From assembly GCA_013416795.1 (NCBI GenBank), contig RQSC01000907.1:15641-79640 (forward strand): a DNA stretch of 64,000 bases, given 5' to 3'. A model generated the notes under the pieces. That model did not search any database. It was given only the letters and a program-made list of their open reading frames with translations, and was not told the origin of the DNA. How positions within the stretch are numbered: position 1 is the stretch's first letter; every line of letters starts with the position of its first letter. The position numbers and the translations under genes are program-made. Positions 3,092 to 33,870 of this stretch are shown piece after piece. The DNA is from Prasinococcaceae sp. CCMP 1430 (lineage: Eukaryota > Plantae > Prasinodermophyta).

Positions 3092-6000
3092 ATGGACGCG
3101 GCCGCGAAGGAGCAGATGGCCAAGGTGGCGGCGGGCATCGAGGAGAAGGATGCCGCGCAGGCCGCCGCCAAGGCGATCGCCGAGGCCACCAAGTCGGCCG
3201 GGGCCTACGCCGACCTGTGCAAGGAGCTGACCGCCGCCGCCGGCGACAAGAAGACGCCCGCCGCGCGCTCGGCCGCCATGTACGTCGTCGAGGCGGTGTG
3301 CAAGGAGAACGGCTCGCGCGGCGAGCCCTTCATGGTGGGCCTGTACCCCACCGTGCTCGAGGCGCTCGGCGACAAGCAGAAGGAGGTGCGCTCGGCCGGC
3401 AAGTCGGCCGTCAAGGCCTTCAAGAAGCTCACCTCGAAGCGCAAGGGCTGCTGCGCGGCGGTGATGCCCATGCTCCTCGAGGCGATGGGCTCGTCCAAGT
3501 GGCAGACCAAGGAAGCCGCGCTCTCGCAGCTCGCGGCGTTCTCCGAGTCGTCGCCCGCGCAGGTGTCGCACGCGCTGCCCGAGCTGGTGCCCATCATCTG
3601 CGACCTCATGTACGACACCAAGGAGGACGTCGCCAAGGCCGCCAAGGACGCCATGGAGAAGGCGATGAACACCACCGGCAACAAGGACCTGGAGCCGCTG
3701 CTGCCCGAGCTCTTCGAGGCGCTCAAGGAGCCCACCAAGGTGCCCGAGACCATCCACGTGCTGGCGTCGACCACCTTCGTGCAGACCGTGACCCGCGGCG
3801 CGCTCGCGCTCGTGTCGCCGCTGCTGCTGCGCGGCTACAACGAGCGCAAGGCGACCATCAAGCGCCAGTGCTCGGTGATCACCTCGAACATGTCCAAGCT
3901 CGTCGAGGAGCCCGAGGAGGCCGCGCCCTTCCTGCCGCACCTCATGCCCGCCGTGGAGAAGGCCTCGCAGGAGGTCGCCGACCCCGAGGCGCGCGGCGTG
4001 TGCGAGAAGGCCTTCGAGCAGCTCAAGCGCATCGACGAGGCCGCCAAGGCCGCCAAGCCGCGCGCGACCGACCCCGTGTCCATCAAGGGCTTCCTCACGG
4101 AGAAGTTCGGCGCGTTCGACGACACCGTGGCCACCTACGTGTCGGTGTGCTGCGCGGCGCTCGTGCAGTCCAAGGAGTGGGACCCGGCCGTGTGGGAGAA
4201 GCACACCGAGCCCTACATGAAGCTCGTCATGGACTCGCAGCCCGTGAAGGACTACGCCAAGCCCTTCGCCGAGAAGATGGAGGAGGAGGCCGCCGTGCCC
4301 GAAGAGGAGGAGGACGAGGACGCCGCCGAGCTGCTGTGCGACTGCAAGTTCACGCTCGCCTACGGCTCCAAGATCCTGCTGCACAACACCAACCTCAAGC
4401 TGCGCCGCGGCCTCAAGTACGGCCTGCTCGGCGGCAACGACTCCGGCAAGACCACGCTCATGCGCGCCATCGCCAACGAGCAGGTCGAGGGCTTCCCCGA
4501 CTCGACGCAGGTCAAGTGCGTCTTCGTCGAGGCCGACATTCTCGGCGAGCTGTCGCATCTGTCGTGCGTCGACTACATCCTCGAGTACCCCGGCATCAAG
4601 GAGATCGGCGCCACGCGCGAGTCGGTCATGGGCCGCCTCAGCGACGTCGGCTTCATCGAGGGCGAGGGCGTGGCGTGCATGCTTAACATGGTGGGCACGC
4701 TCTCGGGCGGCTGGCGCATGAAGCTGGCGCTCGCGCGCGCCATGCTGCAGAACGCCGACGTGCTGCTCATGGACGAGCCGACCAACCATCTCGACGTGCT
4801 CAACGTCAAGTGGGTGACCGACTACCTCTGCGGCCTGGCCAACGTGACCTGCGTGATGGTGTCGCACGACACCAAGTTCCTCGACACCGTGTGCTCGAAC
4901 ATCCTGCGCATCCAGGACCTCAAGCTCAAGGCGCACAAGGGCAACCTCTCCTCGTACGTGGAGAAGTACCCCGACGCCATGTCGTTCTTCTCGTTCAAGG
5001 CGACCAAGTCCAAGATGAGCTTCCCGCAGCCGGGCTTCCTCGAGGGCGTCAAGTCCAAGGGCAAGCCGCTCATGAAGATGGCCAACTGCGAGTTCACCTA
5101 CCCGGGCAACCAGAAGCCCACCATCATCAACATCACCTGCATGGTGTCGCTCGCCTCGCGCGTGGCGTGCGTCGGCCAGAACGGGGCCGGCAAGTCGACC
5201 ATGATCAAGATCCTCACCGGCGAGCTCGTCCCGCAGGTCGGCGAGGTGTGGAACCACCCCAACGCGCGCATCGCCTACGTGGCGCAGCACGCCTTCCACC
5301 ACATCGAGAACCACCTGACGAAGACGCCCAACGAGTACATCCAGTGGCGCTACCAGTACGGCGACGACCGCGAGGGCCTCGCGAAGGACTCGATGATCGT
5401 CACCGAGGAGGAGAAGAAGCTCAAGCAGCAGCCGTTCCTCGTCGACGTCACCGACTCGGACGGCAACGTCGTGCGCATCAAGAAGCAGATCGAGGAGCTC
5501 TACGGCGGCCGCCGCTCCGTCAAGAAGGGCTACGAGTACGAGTGCAAGTTCCTGAACACGGGGCCGGAGGGCAACCAGTACGTGCCGGGCGACAAGCTGA
5601 TCAAGCTCGGCTGGGAGAAGGACATGAAGCTCGTCGACGAGAAGATCGCCGCGCGCGACCGCATGGCGTCGCGCCCGCTGACCAAGGCCAACGTCGAGCA
5701 GCACCTCGCGGACGTCGGCCTCGAGGCCGAGTACGCCACGCACACGCGCATCTCGGCGCTGTCGGGCGGCCAGAAGGTCAAGGTCGTGCTCGCGGCGGCC
5801 ATGTGGAACCAGCCGCACATCGTCATCCTCGACGAGCCCACCAACTACCTCGACCGCGACGCGCTCGGCGCGCTCGCGGGCGCCATCGAGGAGTTCGAGG
5901 GCGGCGTGGTGATGATCACCCACAACGACGAGTTCTGCCGCCAGCTGTGCCCCGAGCGCTGGGTGCTCGAGCGCGGCCCGGACAACATCGGCCGCATGTC

Positions 6001-27922: not shown

Positions 27923-28506
27923 GCCACATGGCACGCCCGTGCGAGGCCGCGGCGATATCGCGATCCATCCCCGTGGTCCCACCTCCCCTCCCCCACGCCG
28001 GCGTGCTATTTTTTTTTTTTTTGGTGCGAGCGGGCGCCGGCTCGGCGCGCGCGAGCGAGCGCGGAGTGCGCGCCGGACTCGAAGAGGACTGGGCCGCGGA
28101 TGGGGCGAGCGGGCGCCGCGCGCGCGCGGGCGCTCGGGGACGGACGCCGAAAAGGGTGGAGGTCCGAACCGGAATCCGGCGCGCGCCTCGCTTTGGTGGT
28201 TGCTCGCTTGCACCTGTCTGTCGTCATCACACCAGGCATTTCAAATAGACCCTACAATGAATACCTAACCCTACGTACTGTATCTACAACGTAACCCTAT
28301 CCTGCGTGCAGCGTGTACTGTACGTGCACCATCAGATGGTGCTGTACTGTGCAGGAGCTCGTCCACCATCGATGGTACACACTGCCGCGGGCGCCGCGCC
28401 ACGACGGCGCTCCGAGCAGGGGGGCACGGTCTGGTGCGACTGCGCCGTGCGAGCGCGGCGTCTCTCCGTTGCTGCGCTCCCCGCGCGGTCGCCGGGGTGG
28501 CGGCGC

Positions 28507-31500
28507 TCAGATGTACCTCCCGCCGTGCCGTCCGCCGCCCGCGTCGTCGTCGGGCTCCCCAATCGGCGCGAAGGGCTCGAACGCCCACGCGGCGTCGCGC
28601 TCCGCCGCGCCGGCTGCAGGCGACGAGCGCGGTGGTCCGACGCGCTCGGAGGCGCCCCTCTGGAGGGCCGCTTCGGCCTCGGACACCGCCGCCTCGAGCT
28701 GCGCGTCAACTCGGCGCATGTGGTCCTGGGGGCCGTTCAGAACATCCACGTGCGGCTGGAATCCTTTGTTCTCGAGCGCGTAACCCGCACCAGTCATCCA
28801 CACCCTCCAGTCGGGCACGGCCACCGTTGAACCATCCACGAGCTCGAGGGACAGGTAGTTGCACGCGACGCCACCCCATGTTCGCCGCCCCACGACGCGG
28901 CCGAGGCCGAGGTGGGAGACGGCGTGCGCGATGACCTCGCCGTCGGAGCCGGTGTTCTCATCGCACAGCACCACCACGGGCCCGACAGCAAGCAGCGGAA
29001 AGCGTCGGGAGGCGCCTCGACGAGGCACCTCGACGCCGAGCGCCCTCTGCTGCAGGTGCGCCAGCAGCACCTCTGAGCCGGCACCTCCCGCGTTGCCTCG
29101 AACATCCACGATCAATGCATCGCGTGCTGACTCGGCATGCAAGTGGCGCCACAGCTCTGCGCGCAAGCGCGCGCGTTCGCGCGTGTGCGCATCCACAAGC
29201 GTGTCAGCAGCGTGCGCTCGCGTGCGCACGCGCGTGCATGCACGCGCATGCGTGCGTGCGCACGCGTGCGCGCGTGCATGCGCGTCCTATTCACGTACCT
29301 GACAGGCCCAAACGCTCCGTGTCCGGCATGTGAAGATAGCCCACCCTTCCCGACGTGCGGGCGTGGACGCGGGCGCGACGAGCGCCAATTAGATCGCGAT
29401 AGCGGGCGTCGACCTCCGAGGAGAGGCAGCGCACGCGCACCAGGCGTGAACGGTGTGAGCCTGCATTCCCCGCACTGTTTCCTTCGCCGCCGGCGCCTCG
29501 CTCTCTCTTCTCGCGGAGTTGGCCCTTCGACCGCTTCTTCTTCGCGGCCTCTTCCGTCGACGCACTGGCTTTGCTCTTCCCCTTGTCCTTCCCATTTCTT
29601 TTCCCTCCCGCCTTGCCCGCGTCCACGCGCAGTCCCGCGAGCTGCGTCGCAATGCTAGCGCTACCAGCGCTCAAAATTTCGAGCAGCACCTCGCGCCCAC
29701 CGGCGTTGAGTAAGAGGTCGGCAGGGCTCAGCTCCGGCGTGAGCCGCACCCTGTCAATTGAGAGGATAGCATCCCCGACGCCAACATTGACGCCGGGCTT
29801 GGCCAGCGGGCCACCGCGTCGCTCATCCCACGTGTCGCCTTGCAGGACGCGCAAAACCCTGTACCCTTGCATCGCGTCGTCCCACGCAAAGTCCGCACCG
29901 AGATATCCTGGGCGGTGGCTCCGCGGCGAATCGCGCCCGCTATCCGCCACCCCAACCCAAGCGTGCGAGCTGCGCAGCTCTCCGACCATTTCCTGCATGA
30001 GGTCTTCCAGCTCGGACCGACACGCCACGCGCGCAAGAAGGGCAGCATGGCGCCTCAGACACCCAGTCCAGTCGATGCCCGCTGCGTGGTCGGGGTGTAG
30101 CGCTGCCTCGTCACGGAAGAGACGCCAAGCTTCGACGAGCATCTGAGTCCACTCTCGCTCTGGCTCCACGAGCAGGCGCACGCGGTCGAGGTCGATGAGA
30201 CCGCTCTGGGGAGTGAAAGCAGCAGGATCCACTTCCTCGTCGTCAGAGTCTTCAGTGGGCGGTTTCGCGCCCGTCGAGAACACGCGGACCTCGTCGTTGC
30301 CGTCCTCGTCGATCCCTTCGACTAGCGTGGTGCGCCCGTCCATTGACACGCTGAAAGACACCACACCGCGTTCGATGAGGGTCGACTCGCGCATGTGGCG
30401 GAGCGAAAACTTCACCAGCGACCCCGACGAGGCATCCCCCTCGCCGTCCGCCTCGTCCTCGTCGACGTCAATGCCCACTGGCGCCGAGACTACCGGAAAG
30501 ACAGTGTAGACGAGGCACTGCTTGTCAATGCCCGCAACCTGGCCGTACCGCCCAGACTCGAGTGGAAGCGCCACAGCTCTATCCAAGATTCCCTCAAAGT
30601 CTATCTCGATCGGATCTGGCGGCACCTCTTCGAATTCGGACCCGCTCGCGCCTTCGTCGTCGTCGCCGTACTCGCTGCCCTCATCCCCGTCGTCAGCGCC
30701 ACTGTCGTCATCATCATACACCGTACGTAGCATGGGCAGAAGAGGATTGGGTGTGTCCCGCTTGAGCGGAAGCACGAACGGTTTTTGCACTCGTGGAAAC
30801 GACACGTCCATGGGCTTCAACTCATCGTACACCGGCTCTGCCTCTCGGCTCGCGAGGAAGTAGAGGAAGTCTCCGGCTGGGTCCCAACTCGGACTCGTGT
30901 CTTCGAGCAGTGGGTCGGTCACCGTGCGGGCCTCGCCGGACCGAACGTCCAGAATCCTGATGGTCGCCATATGGGCGGCCTCCTCGCAGCGGCTGTATGC
31001 GAGCCAATTTCCGCACGGCGACCAGGCAAGACCTTCGATTCCGCCCGCCGACGGCGACCGGTCAGCCACGCTGTGCCGCTCTGAGTCGACATCCACCACA
31101 AGTAGCTCATGCTTGTGATTCACAAGAGCAAGGAGCGGAGCCTGAGGAGAGGCGGACATTTCCTCCACGCGACCCAGCGTCCGCGAGTCCAGCCGCAGCC
31201 GCTTGGGCTCGCCACCCTCGCGAGCTCCGCTGCCGCTCGGTTGGTGCTCCCAGTGAACCTCCAAGCCCTCCTCGCCTCCCGCATCGCTAACCAGCACGAG
31301 TCGTCGCGCGTCAAAGAGCCATGCGGCCAGGCGGACGCGGGTGCTGGCCACGAGCCTCGCGTCGTGGCGCCCCCCTTCCCCGTCTCCCCCCAGCCCCTGC
31401 GCCAGCGCCGCCACCGGCGTTCGGTCGCGCGGGCTCGCGGCGCAGCCCTCCGCAGCAGGAAACGAGAGCACAGGTCCTTCCCACAGCCCGAACGCAAACG

Positions 31501-32170
31501 CCTGCCCTCTGGCAATGGCAAGGAGCTTGAGGCCTTCGGGATGCATCGCCACGGCGTCGAGCTCCTCGTATGCGCTGAGCTCACGCGGCTCGGCCTGCGA
31601 CCGCGTGCCCCGCCAGTCCATGCGCACCTCGCGAACGTCGTTCGTCCATCCGTCCGACCGATCGAGTCGCGCCTCGAGCACGAAAATCCTGCCACCCGCG
31701 CAGAAGGCCGCGCGCACGGAGGTCTCACCCCTGTGCGCGCATGCATCGGCGTGCTCGGCGTCGATCGACACCATCCGGCACCAGAATCCGCCCGACCACT
31801 CGCCCGGGCTCGCGTGCACCACTAGATCGCCTCCGGTGCGCGCGTCCACGCTGACGATGGCTCCCGCAAGGTGGCCCTCTCCGTCCACCGCCATCAGCAG
31901 GCGGCCGCCGGCGACCCATTGCGGCGCGGCGCACTTGCCGATGCCGTGCTTCTCGTCGATGGGCAGCCGCTCGAAGCGCCCGTCGCCGTCGGCGTCGACA
32001 AAGACATCACCCGCGCGCCCACCGCGGTACCCCTTCCACTCCGCTCCACCTGGCTCGCCAACGCCGCGCGCCACCAGCCGGCCTGGGCCCCCGCCGGGCT
32101 CGAAGGCCGCCGCGTCCGCGGGTCCGAGCGGGAGCGGGGTCACGCCGCCGTCCCTGGGGCGGGCGCCGGC
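28507..32170 (-). CDS. tricorn protease homolog (peptidase S41B); exons >=32170..29299 and 29156..28507; N-terminus not located
   Basis: WKGYRGGRAGDVFVD; beta-propeller repeats IEGLAWSPCGNWLAYS and DTSPSWDPAGDFLYFLASR; EWTQMLVEAWR..RD; C1 MVGELRSSHAWV; PDZ-like PGYLGADF..GPLAKPGVNVGVGDAILSID; GRVGYLHMPD; LIVDVRGNAGG; VVLCDENTGSDGE; GRRTWGGV; ENKGFQPHVDV; DAQLEAAV. The 142-nt intron 29298-29157 (GTACGT..CAG) keeps frame. Confidence 0.93.
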
Positions 32171-32179
32171 GCTAGACGG

Positions 32180-32625
32180 CGGCCATTGCAGCGCGCGCGC
32201 GCGCGCCCGCGCGCGGGCTGCGGCGCGCGTGTGTGTGCACGCGGACGCTCGCTCCCTCGTGTGCGTGTGTGTGTGTGTGCGTGTGTGCGCGCCCGCGCGC
32301 TTGTGGGGCGCACGCGAAAACGCGACGCCGCACGCACGCGTGCGCACACGCACGCGCGCGCGAGTGCGCTCTCTGTGCGCTGGCCATATCCGAAAATCTG
32401 TCCAACATCTTCGGGGGTCGCGCGCGCCAGAGTGCGCGCGTGCGTGCGGGCGCACACACGTGTGTGCGTGCACACACACAGGCACACGCGCGCACACACG
32501 CACGCACACACACGCACACACACGCACACACACGCGCGCGCGCGCACACACACGTCCGTGCTCGCGTAGGCACCCACGCGCGCGCGCGTGCGCGCACATA
32601 CACAGTGCACGCGCTCGAGCGAGCA
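32180..32625. repeat. long alternating purine-pyrimidine (CA/TG/CG) microsatellite tract
   Basis: Interleaved (gc)n, (gt)n and (ca)n runs over about 450 bp. Confidence 0.85.
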
Positions 32626-32817
32626 AGAGAGCAAGGGCGAGAGGGAGAGAGAGAGGACATGGCGACGCTCGCGTGCGCCGCGCGGGGCGCGCGGTGTGGC
32701 AGCCGCCGCGGCTGCGGCCGTTGCTGCGGCTGTGCCCCGCTCCCGCTCCCGCACCTCTCCCGGGAAAGAGTAGAATTCATTAAAATGTACTGTACATGTA
32801 TGTTACCCACGAGCCGC

Positions 32818-33291
32818 TCAGCCGTCGAAGAGGGAGGCCTTGCGCCGTCGCCTGTCCGCCACGACGGCCGCCCCGAGCCTGCGCTGGCACTCCTTGTAGC
32901 GCTCGAACAGCCCGCCGCACGCGTCGGCGTCGGCGTGCGCGCCGCTGCCGCCGTGCTCGAGGCGGCAGAGCAGCGACGCCTGCGAGGTCGCCGCGCCGGC
33001 GCGTCGGGTCAGCGCTCGGCGCGCGCTGGACGCGGCGGGCGGGACGGGCTGCGTGGGGTGGGGTGGGGTGCGGTGGGTGGTGGGTGAAGTGGGCAGGGGA
33101 TCGGGGAGCGAATGGGCCAAGGCACCGGAGTGCAGCACCCCGCTCGCCCCGTGGCGCGGGTGGCGCCAACCCACCTCCCTCTCCGGACGGCACGCGTCGC
33201 GCAGCAGGCGCCCGTCAGCGTCGACGCGCGCCTCCACGGGCACCAGCGGATCGACCGCCGCGCCGCCGGGAGCGCCCGCGCCCGCCGCCAT
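32818..33291 (-). CDS. twin CX9C (CHCH) mitochondrial intermembrane-space protein, COX23/COX19-like; exons 33291..33175 and 32979..32818
   Basis: Splicing (GAG|GTGGGT ... GCTGAC ... CAG|GCG) gives DACRPEREASLLCRLEHGG...ACGGLFERYKECQRR, which has two exact CX9C motifs. Confidence 0.8.
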   Translation of the reverse strand: MAAGAGAPGGAAVDPLVPVEARVDADGRLLRDACRPEREVGWRHPRHGASGVLHSGALAHSLPDPLPTSPTTHRTPPHPTQPVPPAASSARRALTRRAGAATSQASLLCRLEHGGSGAHADADACGGLFERYKECQRRLGAAVVADRRRRKASLFDG

Positions 33292-33641
33292 CGCCGCGCA
33301 CCACCCGCCCACTACCAGCGCCGCGCGCAGCCTCGCGGCGGAGCCTCCCAAGCGCCCTCCCTCCCTCCTTCCCGCAGCGCCACGCGAGGCGTGTGCCGAC
33401 GCCGCTGCGCCGCGCCCGCGCTGCTCCTCGGCTGGACCTGAGCGTGCCGCGAAACGCGCCGAGCGCGCACCCCCACATTTGAGGTTTTTTATGTAGGGTC
33501 CATGATCTTCGTCAGATCGCACGCGGCGTTCGCGCCGCCGCCGTTTCGCGCGGTACTGCCTCTCGGCTCCCATGCGTTTGGACTGTTGCGGGGGCGGGCG
33601 CGCACTGGCACGTCCGGAGCACGCACTGTATGTGTAGCTGC

Positions 33642-33870
33642 TTTCACTCGATGCATGTACCCACGGGCGATCTCATTATCAGATTGCATGCGTCTGACCG
33701 GAGCGCGTGCACGTGCACGTGCACGTCCTTTCACTCGATTCATGTGCCCACGGGCGATCTCATGATCAGATTGCATGCGTCTGACCGGAGCGCGTACACG
33801 TGTATGTGTGGGTCCTTTCACTCGAGTCACGTACCCACGGGCGATCTCATGATCAGATTGCATGCGTTGC
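33642..33870. repeat. 87-bp tandem repeat, about 2.6 copies
   Basis: Units begin TTTCACTCGA at 33642, 33729 and 33816 (period 87) and share CCCACGGGCGATCTCATxATCAGATTGCATGCGT. Confidence 0.92.

What the first reader, a model, noticed from the sequence alone, without database searches (positions are those of the whole stretch)
28507..32170. Intron-containing tricorn protease in a green-algal nuclear genome
Seen: the tricorn domain order (beta-propeller repeats, C1, PDZ-like, C2), a canonical 142-nt spliceosomal intron, and host-like flanking genes, which argues against bacterial contamination. Known: tricorn from Thermoplasma and Streptomyces is a large hexameric protease that degrades proteasome products. 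Its catalytic residues are Ser745/His746 (GEL..SH), Ser965 (GSDG), Glu1023 and oxyanion-hole Gly918/Asp966. All have counterparts here: ELRSSH (His codon 29963-29965), GNAGG, TGSDGE (Ser codon 28945-28947) and ENKG. Eukaryotes normally use TPPII/TOP-type peptidases for this role. Inference: a domesticated horizontally acquired, probably active, post-proteasomal peptide-degradation system in an alga. It also carries eukaryote-style acidic and Lys-rich insertions (DDDDSGADDGDEGSEYGDDDE; KAGGKRNGKDKGKSK..KKKRSKG, possibly an NLS).
Basis: partly seen in the sequence, partly recalled or inferred. Interest (0 to 1): 0.8.

Follow-up and report, generated by a model that had tools for sequence, protein, structure and literature searches.

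The report
Tricorn protease gene in green alga
The marine green alga Prasinoderma coloniale has a real, intron-split nuclear gene for a tricorn-type peptide-cutting protease, an enzyme usually described as bacterial or archaeal; the same gene occurs in other tiny marine algae and is already in public protein sets, and this assembly's copy lacks its first ~170 codons.

Summary
On the minus strand, 28507-32172 encodes a tricorn-type S41 peptidase (half of the beta6 propeller, beta7, C1, PDZ, C2). It is split by a 142-nt GT-AG intron (29157-29298). The flanks are eukaryotic (Aquarius, Rab3GAP, Sec1).

The organism is Prasinoderma coloniale CCMP1413. Its published protein PRCOL_00007274 is 100% identical over 1121 shared residues.

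Three corrections:
1. The gene is not unique. Micromonas commoda, Ostreococcus and Bathycoccus carry orthologues, and Telonema and a Picozoa cell carry homologues. All 15 eukaryotic rows separate from 24 bacterial rows (support 100/100). The Mamiellales part of the tree follows the species tree. This points to an old, vertically inherited green-algal gene, not a recent transfer.
2. In the window, 495 nt of GT/CA-rich DNA (32173-32667) replace the 5'UTR and first ~170 codons. The published protein and seven environmental contigs have those codons. This is probably an assembly fault, but it is unresolved.
3. The published model uses a 298-nt intron that deletes 52 conserved residues.

A post-proteasomal role is untested. 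I found no paper that links tricorn to algae. Earlier notes of this scan held no mention of tricorn in this genome.

The parts
28507..29156 (-). Exon B (stop codon 28507-28509): most of the C2 / Peptidase_S41 catalytic domain. Gly918 equivalent at 29083-29085; Ser965 equivalent at 28945-28947; Asp966 equivalent at 28942-28944; Glu1023 equivalent at 28771-28773; Glu at the Asp936 position at 29029-29031.
   Evidence: Pfam PF03572, 65 bits. HMMER alignment to 1K32 chain residues 875-1028, E 8e-29. Codon coordinates.
29157..29298 (-). 142-nt GT-AG intron, phase 1, made of GCRYGC-type low-complexity DNA. Absent at this site in all other eukaryotic and bacterial homologues examined.
   Evidence: Sequence. 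Homology jump 29300 to 29160. The TARA allele has a 143-nt version. 23 of 142 columns vary, with 1-nt and 6-nt indels, among 8 haplotypes, against 2.6-2.8% in the flanking coding DNA. Similar low-complexity DNA occurs elsewhere in the window.
29299..32172 (-). Exon A as present in the window: second half of the beta6 propeller, the beta7 propeller, C1 (29981-30163), Ser745/His746 equivalents (29966-29968 / 29963-29965), the PDZ domain (29663-29908) and the start of C2. Acidic insert at 30653-30715; Lys-rich insert at 29495-29614.
   Evidence: Pfam. PDB alignments. 98% identity to P0001 and 100% to P0322. No indels against environmental alleles, and 29 of 45 exon-A mismatches against L004 fall at third codon positions (33 of 51 over both exons). 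Insert coordinates.
32173..32667 (-). 495-nt GT/CA-rich, partly self-complementary low-complexity segment. It stands where relatives have 62 nt of 5' leader plus the first ~167-172 codons (the first blades of beta6). Either an assembly fault or a strain-specific replacement.
   Evidence: L008 is collinear with the window on both sides (32668-33693 and 28109-32172), but its positions 4262-4825 have no counterpart. All 7 environmental contigs carry the N-terminal exon and none carries this segment. Self-inverted similarity 32195-32595. Microsatellites.

Best explanation
This is the Prasinoderma coloniale orthologue of a eukaryotic, mainly green-algal, clade of tricorn-core peptidases (MEROPS S41B type). 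It is a nuclear gene that gained one lineage-specific 142-nt intron and is kept under purifying selection.

Shown here: the domain order; homology to solved tricorn; conservation of the Ser-His dyad with its helper Ser and Glu, and of the oxyanion Gly/Asp; the eukaryotic context; and clade membership.

Inferred from the Thermoplasma enzyme: the protein assembles into a ring-shaped, self-compartmentalising oligomer. Oligopeptides released by ATP-dependent proteases enter through a propeller channel and are cut to di- and tripeptides at the Ser in C2.

The compartment is unknown. The P. coloniale N-terminus, taken from the published protein and environmental alleles, is Ala/Gly/Pro-rich and not clearly a presequence. 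A cytosolic role downstream of the proteasome is therefore my slight preference for this species.

The missing 5' end in the window is most likely a fault of this assembly version rather than a truncated gene.
For: - Pfam and PDB matches.
- Catalytic residues at the stated codons.
- Eukaryotic neighbours, with the Sec1 neighbour's best named hits in green algae.
- The same Sec1 - small ORF - tricorn arrangement on TARA scaffold L008.
- dN/dS 0.12, no exon indels, third-position bias.
- Careful ML tree: 15 eukaryotic rows against 24 bacterial rows at 100/100; green clade at 98/94; (Bathycoccus+Ostreococcus) and the Micromonas group as in the species tree (quick trees).
- Named orthologues: Micromonas commoda, Ostreococcus mediterraneus MMETSP transcript and Bathycoccus prasinos. 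The Ostreococcus lucimarinus-like context comes from the ArgJ neighbour.
- PRCOL_00007274 is identical over 1121 residues and carries the N-terminal 172 residues.
Against: - No transcript, activity, oligomer or localisation data.
- As assembled, the window copy has no start codon and lacks about three beta6 blades. This includes the region where Thermoplasma has the C-terminus-anchoring Arg131/Arg132, and in the full-length allele that stretch does not align.
- The tree is unrooted and has no archaeal sequences.
- Bacterial sampling was limited to the best matches.
- Composition heterogeneity was flagged for many rows, including the window's.
Confidence: 0.8

Rival explanations
1. The eukaryotic tricorns work inside an organelle (plastid or mitochondrion). 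There they would clear peptides made by Clp, FtsH or Lon, rather than acting after the cytosolic proteasome.
For: ORFs of Ostreococcus-type (P0003, P0004, P0336), Micromonas-type (P0337) and related clusters (P0006, P0346, P0348) carry 40-95 extra N-terminal residues before the conserved GYYRWP start. These extensions are rich in Arg/Ser/Ala/Thr and poor in acidic residues. Most bacteria that carry tricorn homologues in the trees (Chloroflexota, Planctomycetota, cyanobacteria) are, from general knowledge, phyla without proteasomes, so the family does not depend on one.
Against: - The extensions come from prokaryote-style ORF calls on metagenome contigs and may overshoot the true start.
- The annotated M. 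commoda model starts later.
- The P. coloniale extension has one Arg and two Glu in 36 residues.
- No targeting predictor was available.
Confidence: 0.35
2. One reading: a recent, domesticated bacterial gene specific to this alga, installed as a post-proteasomal system in place of TPPII-type peptidases.
For: The family is overwhelmingly prokaryotic. [quoted passage not shown]
Against: - Orthologues occur in three Mamiellales genera and in other protists.
- The eukaryotes are monophyletic at 100/100 and the topology follows the species tree.
- The best bacterial identity is only ~30-34%.
- GC content and introns are fully host-like.
- Whether TPPII is absent was not tested.
Confidence: 0.1
3. 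The window copy is a genuinely 5'-truncated, dying gene in this strain.
For: - No ATG, and about 170 codons are missing.
- The replacement is not at an N-gap.
- The replacing DNA is of the genome's own low-complexity type.
Against: - The remaining 3.5 kb has no stop, frameshift or indel, and is 100% identical in protein to the published model of the same strain, which does include the N-terminus.
- The junction lies in an 18-nt coding minisatellite that varies among alleles. That is a likely place for an assembler to slip.
- Another follow-up of this scan reports a mis-join elsewhere in this assembly (unchecked).
Confidence: 0.15
4. A bacterial contaminant contig.
For: Only the prokaryotic flavour of the family.
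Against: - The intron.
- Spliceosome and vesicle-traffic genes lie on the same contig.
- The same neighbour appears on independent TARA scaffolds.
- 69% GC, like the rest of the window.
Confidence: 0.01

Closest known systems
Tricorn protease of Thermoplasma acidophilum (PDB 1K32, 1N6D-F)
   Same: - Domain order beta6-beta7-C1-PDZ-C2.
- Ser745/His746, Gly918, Ser965/Asp966 and Glu1023 are all matched.
- An acidic residue (Glu) sits at the Asp936 position. The role of that residue is from my memory of the structural papers.
   Different: - Roughly 30% identity or less, with only local HMMER matches.
- A nuclear gene with an intron.
- Acidic and Lys-rich loop insertions.
- The Arg131/Arg132 stretch does not align in the full-length allele.
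- Oligomer state, capsids and F1-F3 partners are unknown.
Mamiellales orthologues: Micromonas commoda 'predicted protein' (P0339), Ostreococcus mediterraneus A0A7S0KLA6 cluster (P0336), Bathycoccus prasinos CAL6349121.1 cluster (P0342), Ostreococcus lucimarinus-like P0004
   Same: - Same eukaryotic clade (98/94 support).
- 38-46% identity.
- Same Pfam set.
- Shared acidic patch, and in Ostreococcus the Lys-rich PDZ-C2 loop.
   Different: - Single ORFs with no intron at this site.
- Several have presequence-like N-termini.
- Annotated only as predicted, unnamed or 'tail specific protease domain' proteins.
Bacterial tricorn homologues (Chloroflexota, Planctomycetota, cyanobacteria, actinomycetes such as Streptomyces)
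   Same: Full architecture and catalytic motifs; 29-34% identity.
   Different: - Shorter (about 1050-1150 aa).
- They lack the eukaryote-type insertions.
- They are separated from all eukaryotic rows by a 100/100 branch.
Tripeptidyl peptidase II (TPPII)
   Same: Proposed role: a giant, ATP-independent peptidase acting after the proteasome. It is called the eukaryotic counterpart of tricorn (PMC2651629).
   Different: An unrelated fold (subtilisin, S8). This is a functional analogy only; nothing here shows the alga lacks it.
C-terminal processing peptidases CtpA/CtpB/Prc (S41A)
   Same: Same catalytic S41 domain plus a PDZ domain; weak hits.
   Different: They have no beta-propellers or C1 domain. 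Scores fall far below the family cut-offs.

Membership tests
Tricorn core protease (MEROPS S41B) | Domain order: beta6 propeller, beta7 propeller, C1, PDZ, C2 (S41) | tested here: met
   C1, PDZ_Tricorn and Peptidase_S41 are found in order. The propeller part aligns to 1K32. Precomputed Tricorn_N and Tricorn_2nd hits exist for the 98%-identical P0001. In the window itself the first half of beta6 is absent.
Tricorn core protease (MEROPS S41B) | Catalytic Ser965-His746, with Ser745 and Glu1023 | tested here: met
   HMMER alignments to 1K32 with residues counted (chain numbering +26): SSH at 29963-29968, GSDG Ser at 28945-28947, ENKG Glu at 28771-28773.
Tricorn core protease (MEROPS S41B) | Oxyanion hole Gly918 and Asp966 | tested here: met
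   DVRGNAGG aligns to DVRFNGGG, and GSDG is conserved. Note that the published model PRCOL_00007274 splices the Gly918 motif out.
Tricorn core protease (MEROPS S41B) | Basic pair Arg131/Arg132 that anchors the substrate C-terminus (role from memory of Kim et al. 2002) | tested here: inconclusive
   This region is missing from the window. In the full-length allele P0001 the Thermoplasma residues fall in an unaligned insert.
Tricorn core protease (MEROPS S41B) | D3 hexameric toroid / capsid assembly | not testable with these tools
   The spliced protein cannot be handed to the predictor by reference. Full-length relatives exceed 1200 aa, and no multimer prediction was available.
Tricorn core protease (MEROPS S41B) | Peptidase activity, and cooperation with the F1, F2 and F3 aminopeptidases | not tested
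   No whole-genome protein search was available. Earlier scan notes mention no tripeptidyl peptidase or iminopeptidase.
Eukaryotic (green-algal) tricorn clade | Groups with named eukaryotic sequences to the exclusion of bacteria | tested here: met
   Careful IQ-TREE: eukaryotes against bacteria 100/100; Prasinoderma plus Mamiellales 98/94.
S41A C-terminal processing peptidases (CtpA/Prc) | A PDZ plus S41 core without propellers, scoring above the NCBIfam cut-offs | tested here: not met
   Hits score 21-33 bits against cut-offs of 218-725, and propellers and C1 are present.

The most novel reading that the evidence does not exclude
Green algae from Prasinodermophyta to Mamiellales, and perhaps Telonema and Picozoa, have vertically kept an ancient tricorn peptidase. 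It carries eukaryote-specific acidic and Lys-rich loops. It would be an unrecognised giant peptidase of eukaryotic cells, working in an organelle or beside TPPII in the cytosol. That would overturn the textbook split of 'tricorn in prokaryotes, TPPII in eukaryotes'.
Probability: 0.35. Interest if true: 0.55.

Novelty: new member of a known kind. Interest (0 to 1): 0.35.

Why it matters
Reviews treat tricorn as an archaeal and bacterial machine and TPPII as its eukaryotic stand-in. A conserved, selected tricorn clade in abundant marine picoalgae shows that the split is not clean; one Bathycoccus cluster alone has 539 member sequences. It also offers tractable hosts, such as Ostreococcus and Micromonas, for asking what a tricorn does in a eukaryotic cell.

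In practical terms, the public P. coloniale gene model is mis-spliced so that it loses the oxyanion-hole motif. This assembly version also lacks the first exon. Both points matter to anyone who clones or models the protein.

Tried and rejected
- Search for the N-terminal exon in the window. blastn of L004 and L008 and tblastn of P0001 and P0322 N-termini gave nothing but noise.
- Two exact-pattern scans of JGI metagenome contigs, one for a shared exon 33-mer and one for the unique centre of the 495-nt segment. Both returned 0 hits.
- Look-ups of the contigs encoding P0322 and the window-encoded Sec1 protein P0330, meant to recover another assembly version. Neither is on record.
- Enumeration of possible short first exons. 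One example is an ATG at 32660 with a GTATGT donor at 32601 spliced to 32171. The GT-rich DNA allows 349 in-frame combinations, so this is uninformative.
- Literature search with the word-start 'tricorn' was swamped by 'tricornutum'. Phrase and whole-word searches found no paper that links tricorn protease to algae. The P. coloniale genome paper and its supplements do not mention it.
- Introner idea. The intron has only low-complexity similarity to other window regions, with no full-length copies.
- Contamination was rejected.
- Structure prediction was not run, because spliced sequences have no reference and full-length relatives exceed the size limit.
Full report
**What is there.** The window is about 69% GC throughout. 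On the minus strand, a 1111-codon ORF (29291-32626) is followed by a 240-codon ORF (28507-29229). Pfam places Tricorn_C1 and PDZ_Tricorn in the first ORF and Peptidase_S41 in the second. HMMER against PDB sequences matches only tricorn protease (1K32, 1N6D-F) for the propeller and C1/PDZ parts. For C2 it matches tricorn at E 8e-29, far ahead of CtpB and the D1 protease.

**The intron.** The two ORFs join through 29298..29157: 142 nt, GTACGT...GCGCAG, phase 1, with an in-frame TGA just inside. Three independent lines support it.
- tblastn of seven relatives breaks at 29300 and resumes at 29160. The spliced peptide ...GYLHMPDTERLGLS|ELWRHL...DVRGNAGG aligns without a gap to Thermoplasma ...GYIHIPDMGMMGL NEFYRLF...DVRFNGGG.
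- A 98%-identical TARA allele has a 143-nt version, while the 3.5 kb of exons show no indel at all.
- In an alignment of the window with seven environmental contigs, 23 of the 142 intron columns vary, including 1-nt and 6-nt indels. Only 4 of the 156 adjacent nucleotides vary, all at third codon positions. In the remaining exon parts 25 of 893 nt vary, 18 of them at third positions.

No other eukaryotic or bacterial homologue examined is interrupted here. The intron was therefore gained in the Prasinoderma lineage.

**Catalytic residues.** I counted along the HMMER alignments (1K32 chain numbering +26 gives the published numbering). Ser745/His746 correspond to the SSH motif, with the His codon at 29963-29965. 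Gly918 is the last Gly of GNAGG (29083-29085). Ser965/Asp966 fall in GSDG, with the Ser codon at 28945-28947. Glu1023 falls in ENKG (28771-28773). A Glu (29029-29031) sits at the Asp936 position; the role of that residue comes from my memory of the structural papers.

**Whose genome.** Neighbouring ORFs encode Aquarius (a spliceosomal helicase), the Rab3GAP catalytic subunit, a WD40 protein and a Sec1/KEULE-type protein. The best named hits of the Sec1 protein are green algae at 40-46% identity. The 90%-identity cluster of the tricorn protein contains EukProt EP00793 Prasinoderma coloniale PRCOL_00007274-RA (P0322, 1295 aa). Its residues 175-1295 are identical to the window's translation over 942 + 179 residues. 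The genome paper gives 69.8% GC and 25.3 Mb and never mentions tricorn, in text or supplements. Contamination is excluded. An 8.9-kb TARA scaffold (L008) also carries the same Sec1 - small ORF - tricorn arrangement.

**The published model is mis-spliced.** P0322 lacks 52 residues that the window encodes (VGYLHMPD...LLAHLQQ). This fits a GT at 29344 and an AG at 29047, a 298-nt intron. That deletes the most conserved family motif and the oxyanion Gly. The Pfam S41 hit then covers only profile positions 83-165 (42.6 bits), against 22-165 (65 bits) for exon B alone. The variation data show that those 156 nt behave as coding sequence.

**The missing 5' end.** Homology begins at 32172, in the middle of the beta6 propeller (Thermoplasma residue ~172), and there is no in-frame ATG. 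P0322 and seven environmental contigs (L004, L008-L013; 97-98% identical) all encode a further ~125-172 N-terminal residues contiguous with the rest. L008 is collinear with the window at 32668-33693 and at 28109-32172. Its 564 nt between those blocks (5' leader plus 167 codons) are replaced in the window by 495 nt of GT/CA microsatellite-like, partly self-complementary DNA.

The junction lies in an 18-nt coding minisatellite with Ala/Gly/Arg/Ser units. It has 0, +6 or +12 extra residues in different alleles. No N-run is nearby.

The published protein of the same strain has the N-terminus. UniRef and EukProt also hold different Sec1 models for this locus, which hints at two annotation or assembly versions. 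Another follow-up of this scan reports a mis-join elsewhere in this assembly (unchecked). On balance I favour an assembly fault, at about 0.7. A real truncation is not excluded.

**Distribution and history.** A search with the window protein returned five long (1288-1639 aa) metagenome proteins at 34-42% identity ahead of the bacterial hits.
- Genomic context shows that P0003 and P0004 lie on compact contigs next to DCP2, LSM and F-box genes.
- The ArgJ neighbour of P0004 clusters at 90% or more with Ostreococcus lucimarinus ArgJ.
- A search with P0004 found Micromonas commoda 'predicted protein' P0339, listed in UniRef as 'Tail specific protease domain-containing protein'.
- Cluster look-ups named an Ostreococcus mediterraneus MMETSP transcript and UniRef A0A7S0KLA6, Bathycoccus prasinos CAL6349121.1 and others, Telonema subtile, and a Picozoa single-cell assembly.

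A careful IQ-TREE (LG+C20 PMSF, 39 rows, 1078 columns) separates 15 eukaryotic rows from 24 bacterial rows at 100/100. It unites Prasinoderma (with an unnamed 65%-GC marine lineage, 97/91) with the Mamiellales at 98/94. Within the Mamiellales it recovers Bathycoccus+Ostreococcus (97/88) beside the Micromonas group (100/100), as in the species tree (quick versions). Cyanobacterial sequences sit deep among the bacteria, so a plastid origin is not indicated, and no donor is resolved.

The tree is unrooted and lacks archaea. Its bootstrap had not fully converged, and composition heterogeneity was flagged. Even so, the picture is of an old, largely vertically inherited green-algal gene, not a recent acquisition by this alga.

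**Selection and features.** Against L008, dS is 0.035 and dN is 0.004, giving dN/dS 0.12 (31 synonymous and 11 non-synonymous differences). The Lys-rich insertion in the PDZ-C2 linker (29495-29614) occupies a site where Ostreococcus-type, P0002, P0006 and Telonema proteins also carry Lys-rich inserts, while most bacteria have none. An acidic patch (30434-30469) is shared by all eukaryotic rows.

**Function.** Nothing here tests activity, assembly, partners or location. By homology the protein should act as tricorn does. Whether it works after the proteasome is open. Several Mamiellales-type ORFs begin with 40-95 residues rich in Arg/Ser/Ala/Thr and poor in acidic residues before the conserved GYYRWP start. 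These look like organelle presequences, although the ORF calls may overshoot the true start. The P. coloniale extension is Ala/Gly/Pro-rich with one Arg. [quoted passage not shown] I found no paper that links tricorn with algae.

**Verdict.** It overstates uniqueness and recency, and it missed the truncated 5' end. This is a new member of a known family inside an under-described eukaryotic clade, and the gene is already present, though badly modelled, in public data.

Noticed in passing
window 29047-29344: The public gene model PRCOL_00007274-RA appears to use a 298-nt intron. That removes 52 conserved residues, including the GYLHMPD motif and the oxyanion-hole DVRGNAGG. Population variation supports the 142-nt intron instead.
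   Followed up: yes
window 32173-32667: 495 nt of GT/CA-rich, self-inverted low-complexity DNA replace the 5' leader and first ~170 codons of the gene. Seven environmental contigs and the published protein of the same strain have those codons.
   Followed up: partly
window ~32172; L010:650-700, L011, L013, L008:4810-4830: An 18-nt coding minisatellite (Ala-Gly-Ala-Arg-Ala-Ser-type units) varies among alleles: 0 extra residues in L004/L008/L009/L012, +6 in P0322, +12 in L010/L011/L013. It lies exactly at the junction where the window diverges.
   Followed up: partly
P0003, P0004, P0336, P0337, P0006, P0346, P0348 (first 40-95 residues): Mamiellales-type tricorn ORFs start with Arg/Ser/Ala/Thr-rich, acid-poor extensions that resemble plastid or mitochondrial presequences. 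The annotated Micromonas commoda model (P0339) starts at a later Met than the longer ORF P0337.
   Followed up: partly
window 29495-29614 and 30434-30469; same alignment columns in P0002, P0004, P0006, P0166: A Lys-rich loop in the PDZ-C2 linker and an acidic patch recur at the same sites in several eukaryotic tricorns, including Telonema, but not in most bacterial ones. They may be clade markers.
   Followed up: partly
window 33641-33867: An 87-nt tandem repeat (2.6 copies, 91% matches) lies in the region between the small minus-strand ORF and the Sec1 gene. The TARA scaffold L008 has a related but shorter array.
   Followed up: no
L001:2927-5152 and the equivalent gene on the P0130 contigs: In the Ostreococcus-like contigs, a 741-768-aa gene combines RuBisCO_large and Cupin_2 domains. 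It sits three genes upstream of the tricorn gene (DCP2/NUDIX and an aminotransferase lie between) and may be a RuBisCO-like protein fused to a cupin.
   Followed up: no
window 32818-33573 (minus strand): A 251-codon ORF with no Pfam match ends 150 nt upstream of the replaced segment. Its counterpart on L008 is called as a 157-aa gene. Function unknown.
   Followed up: no
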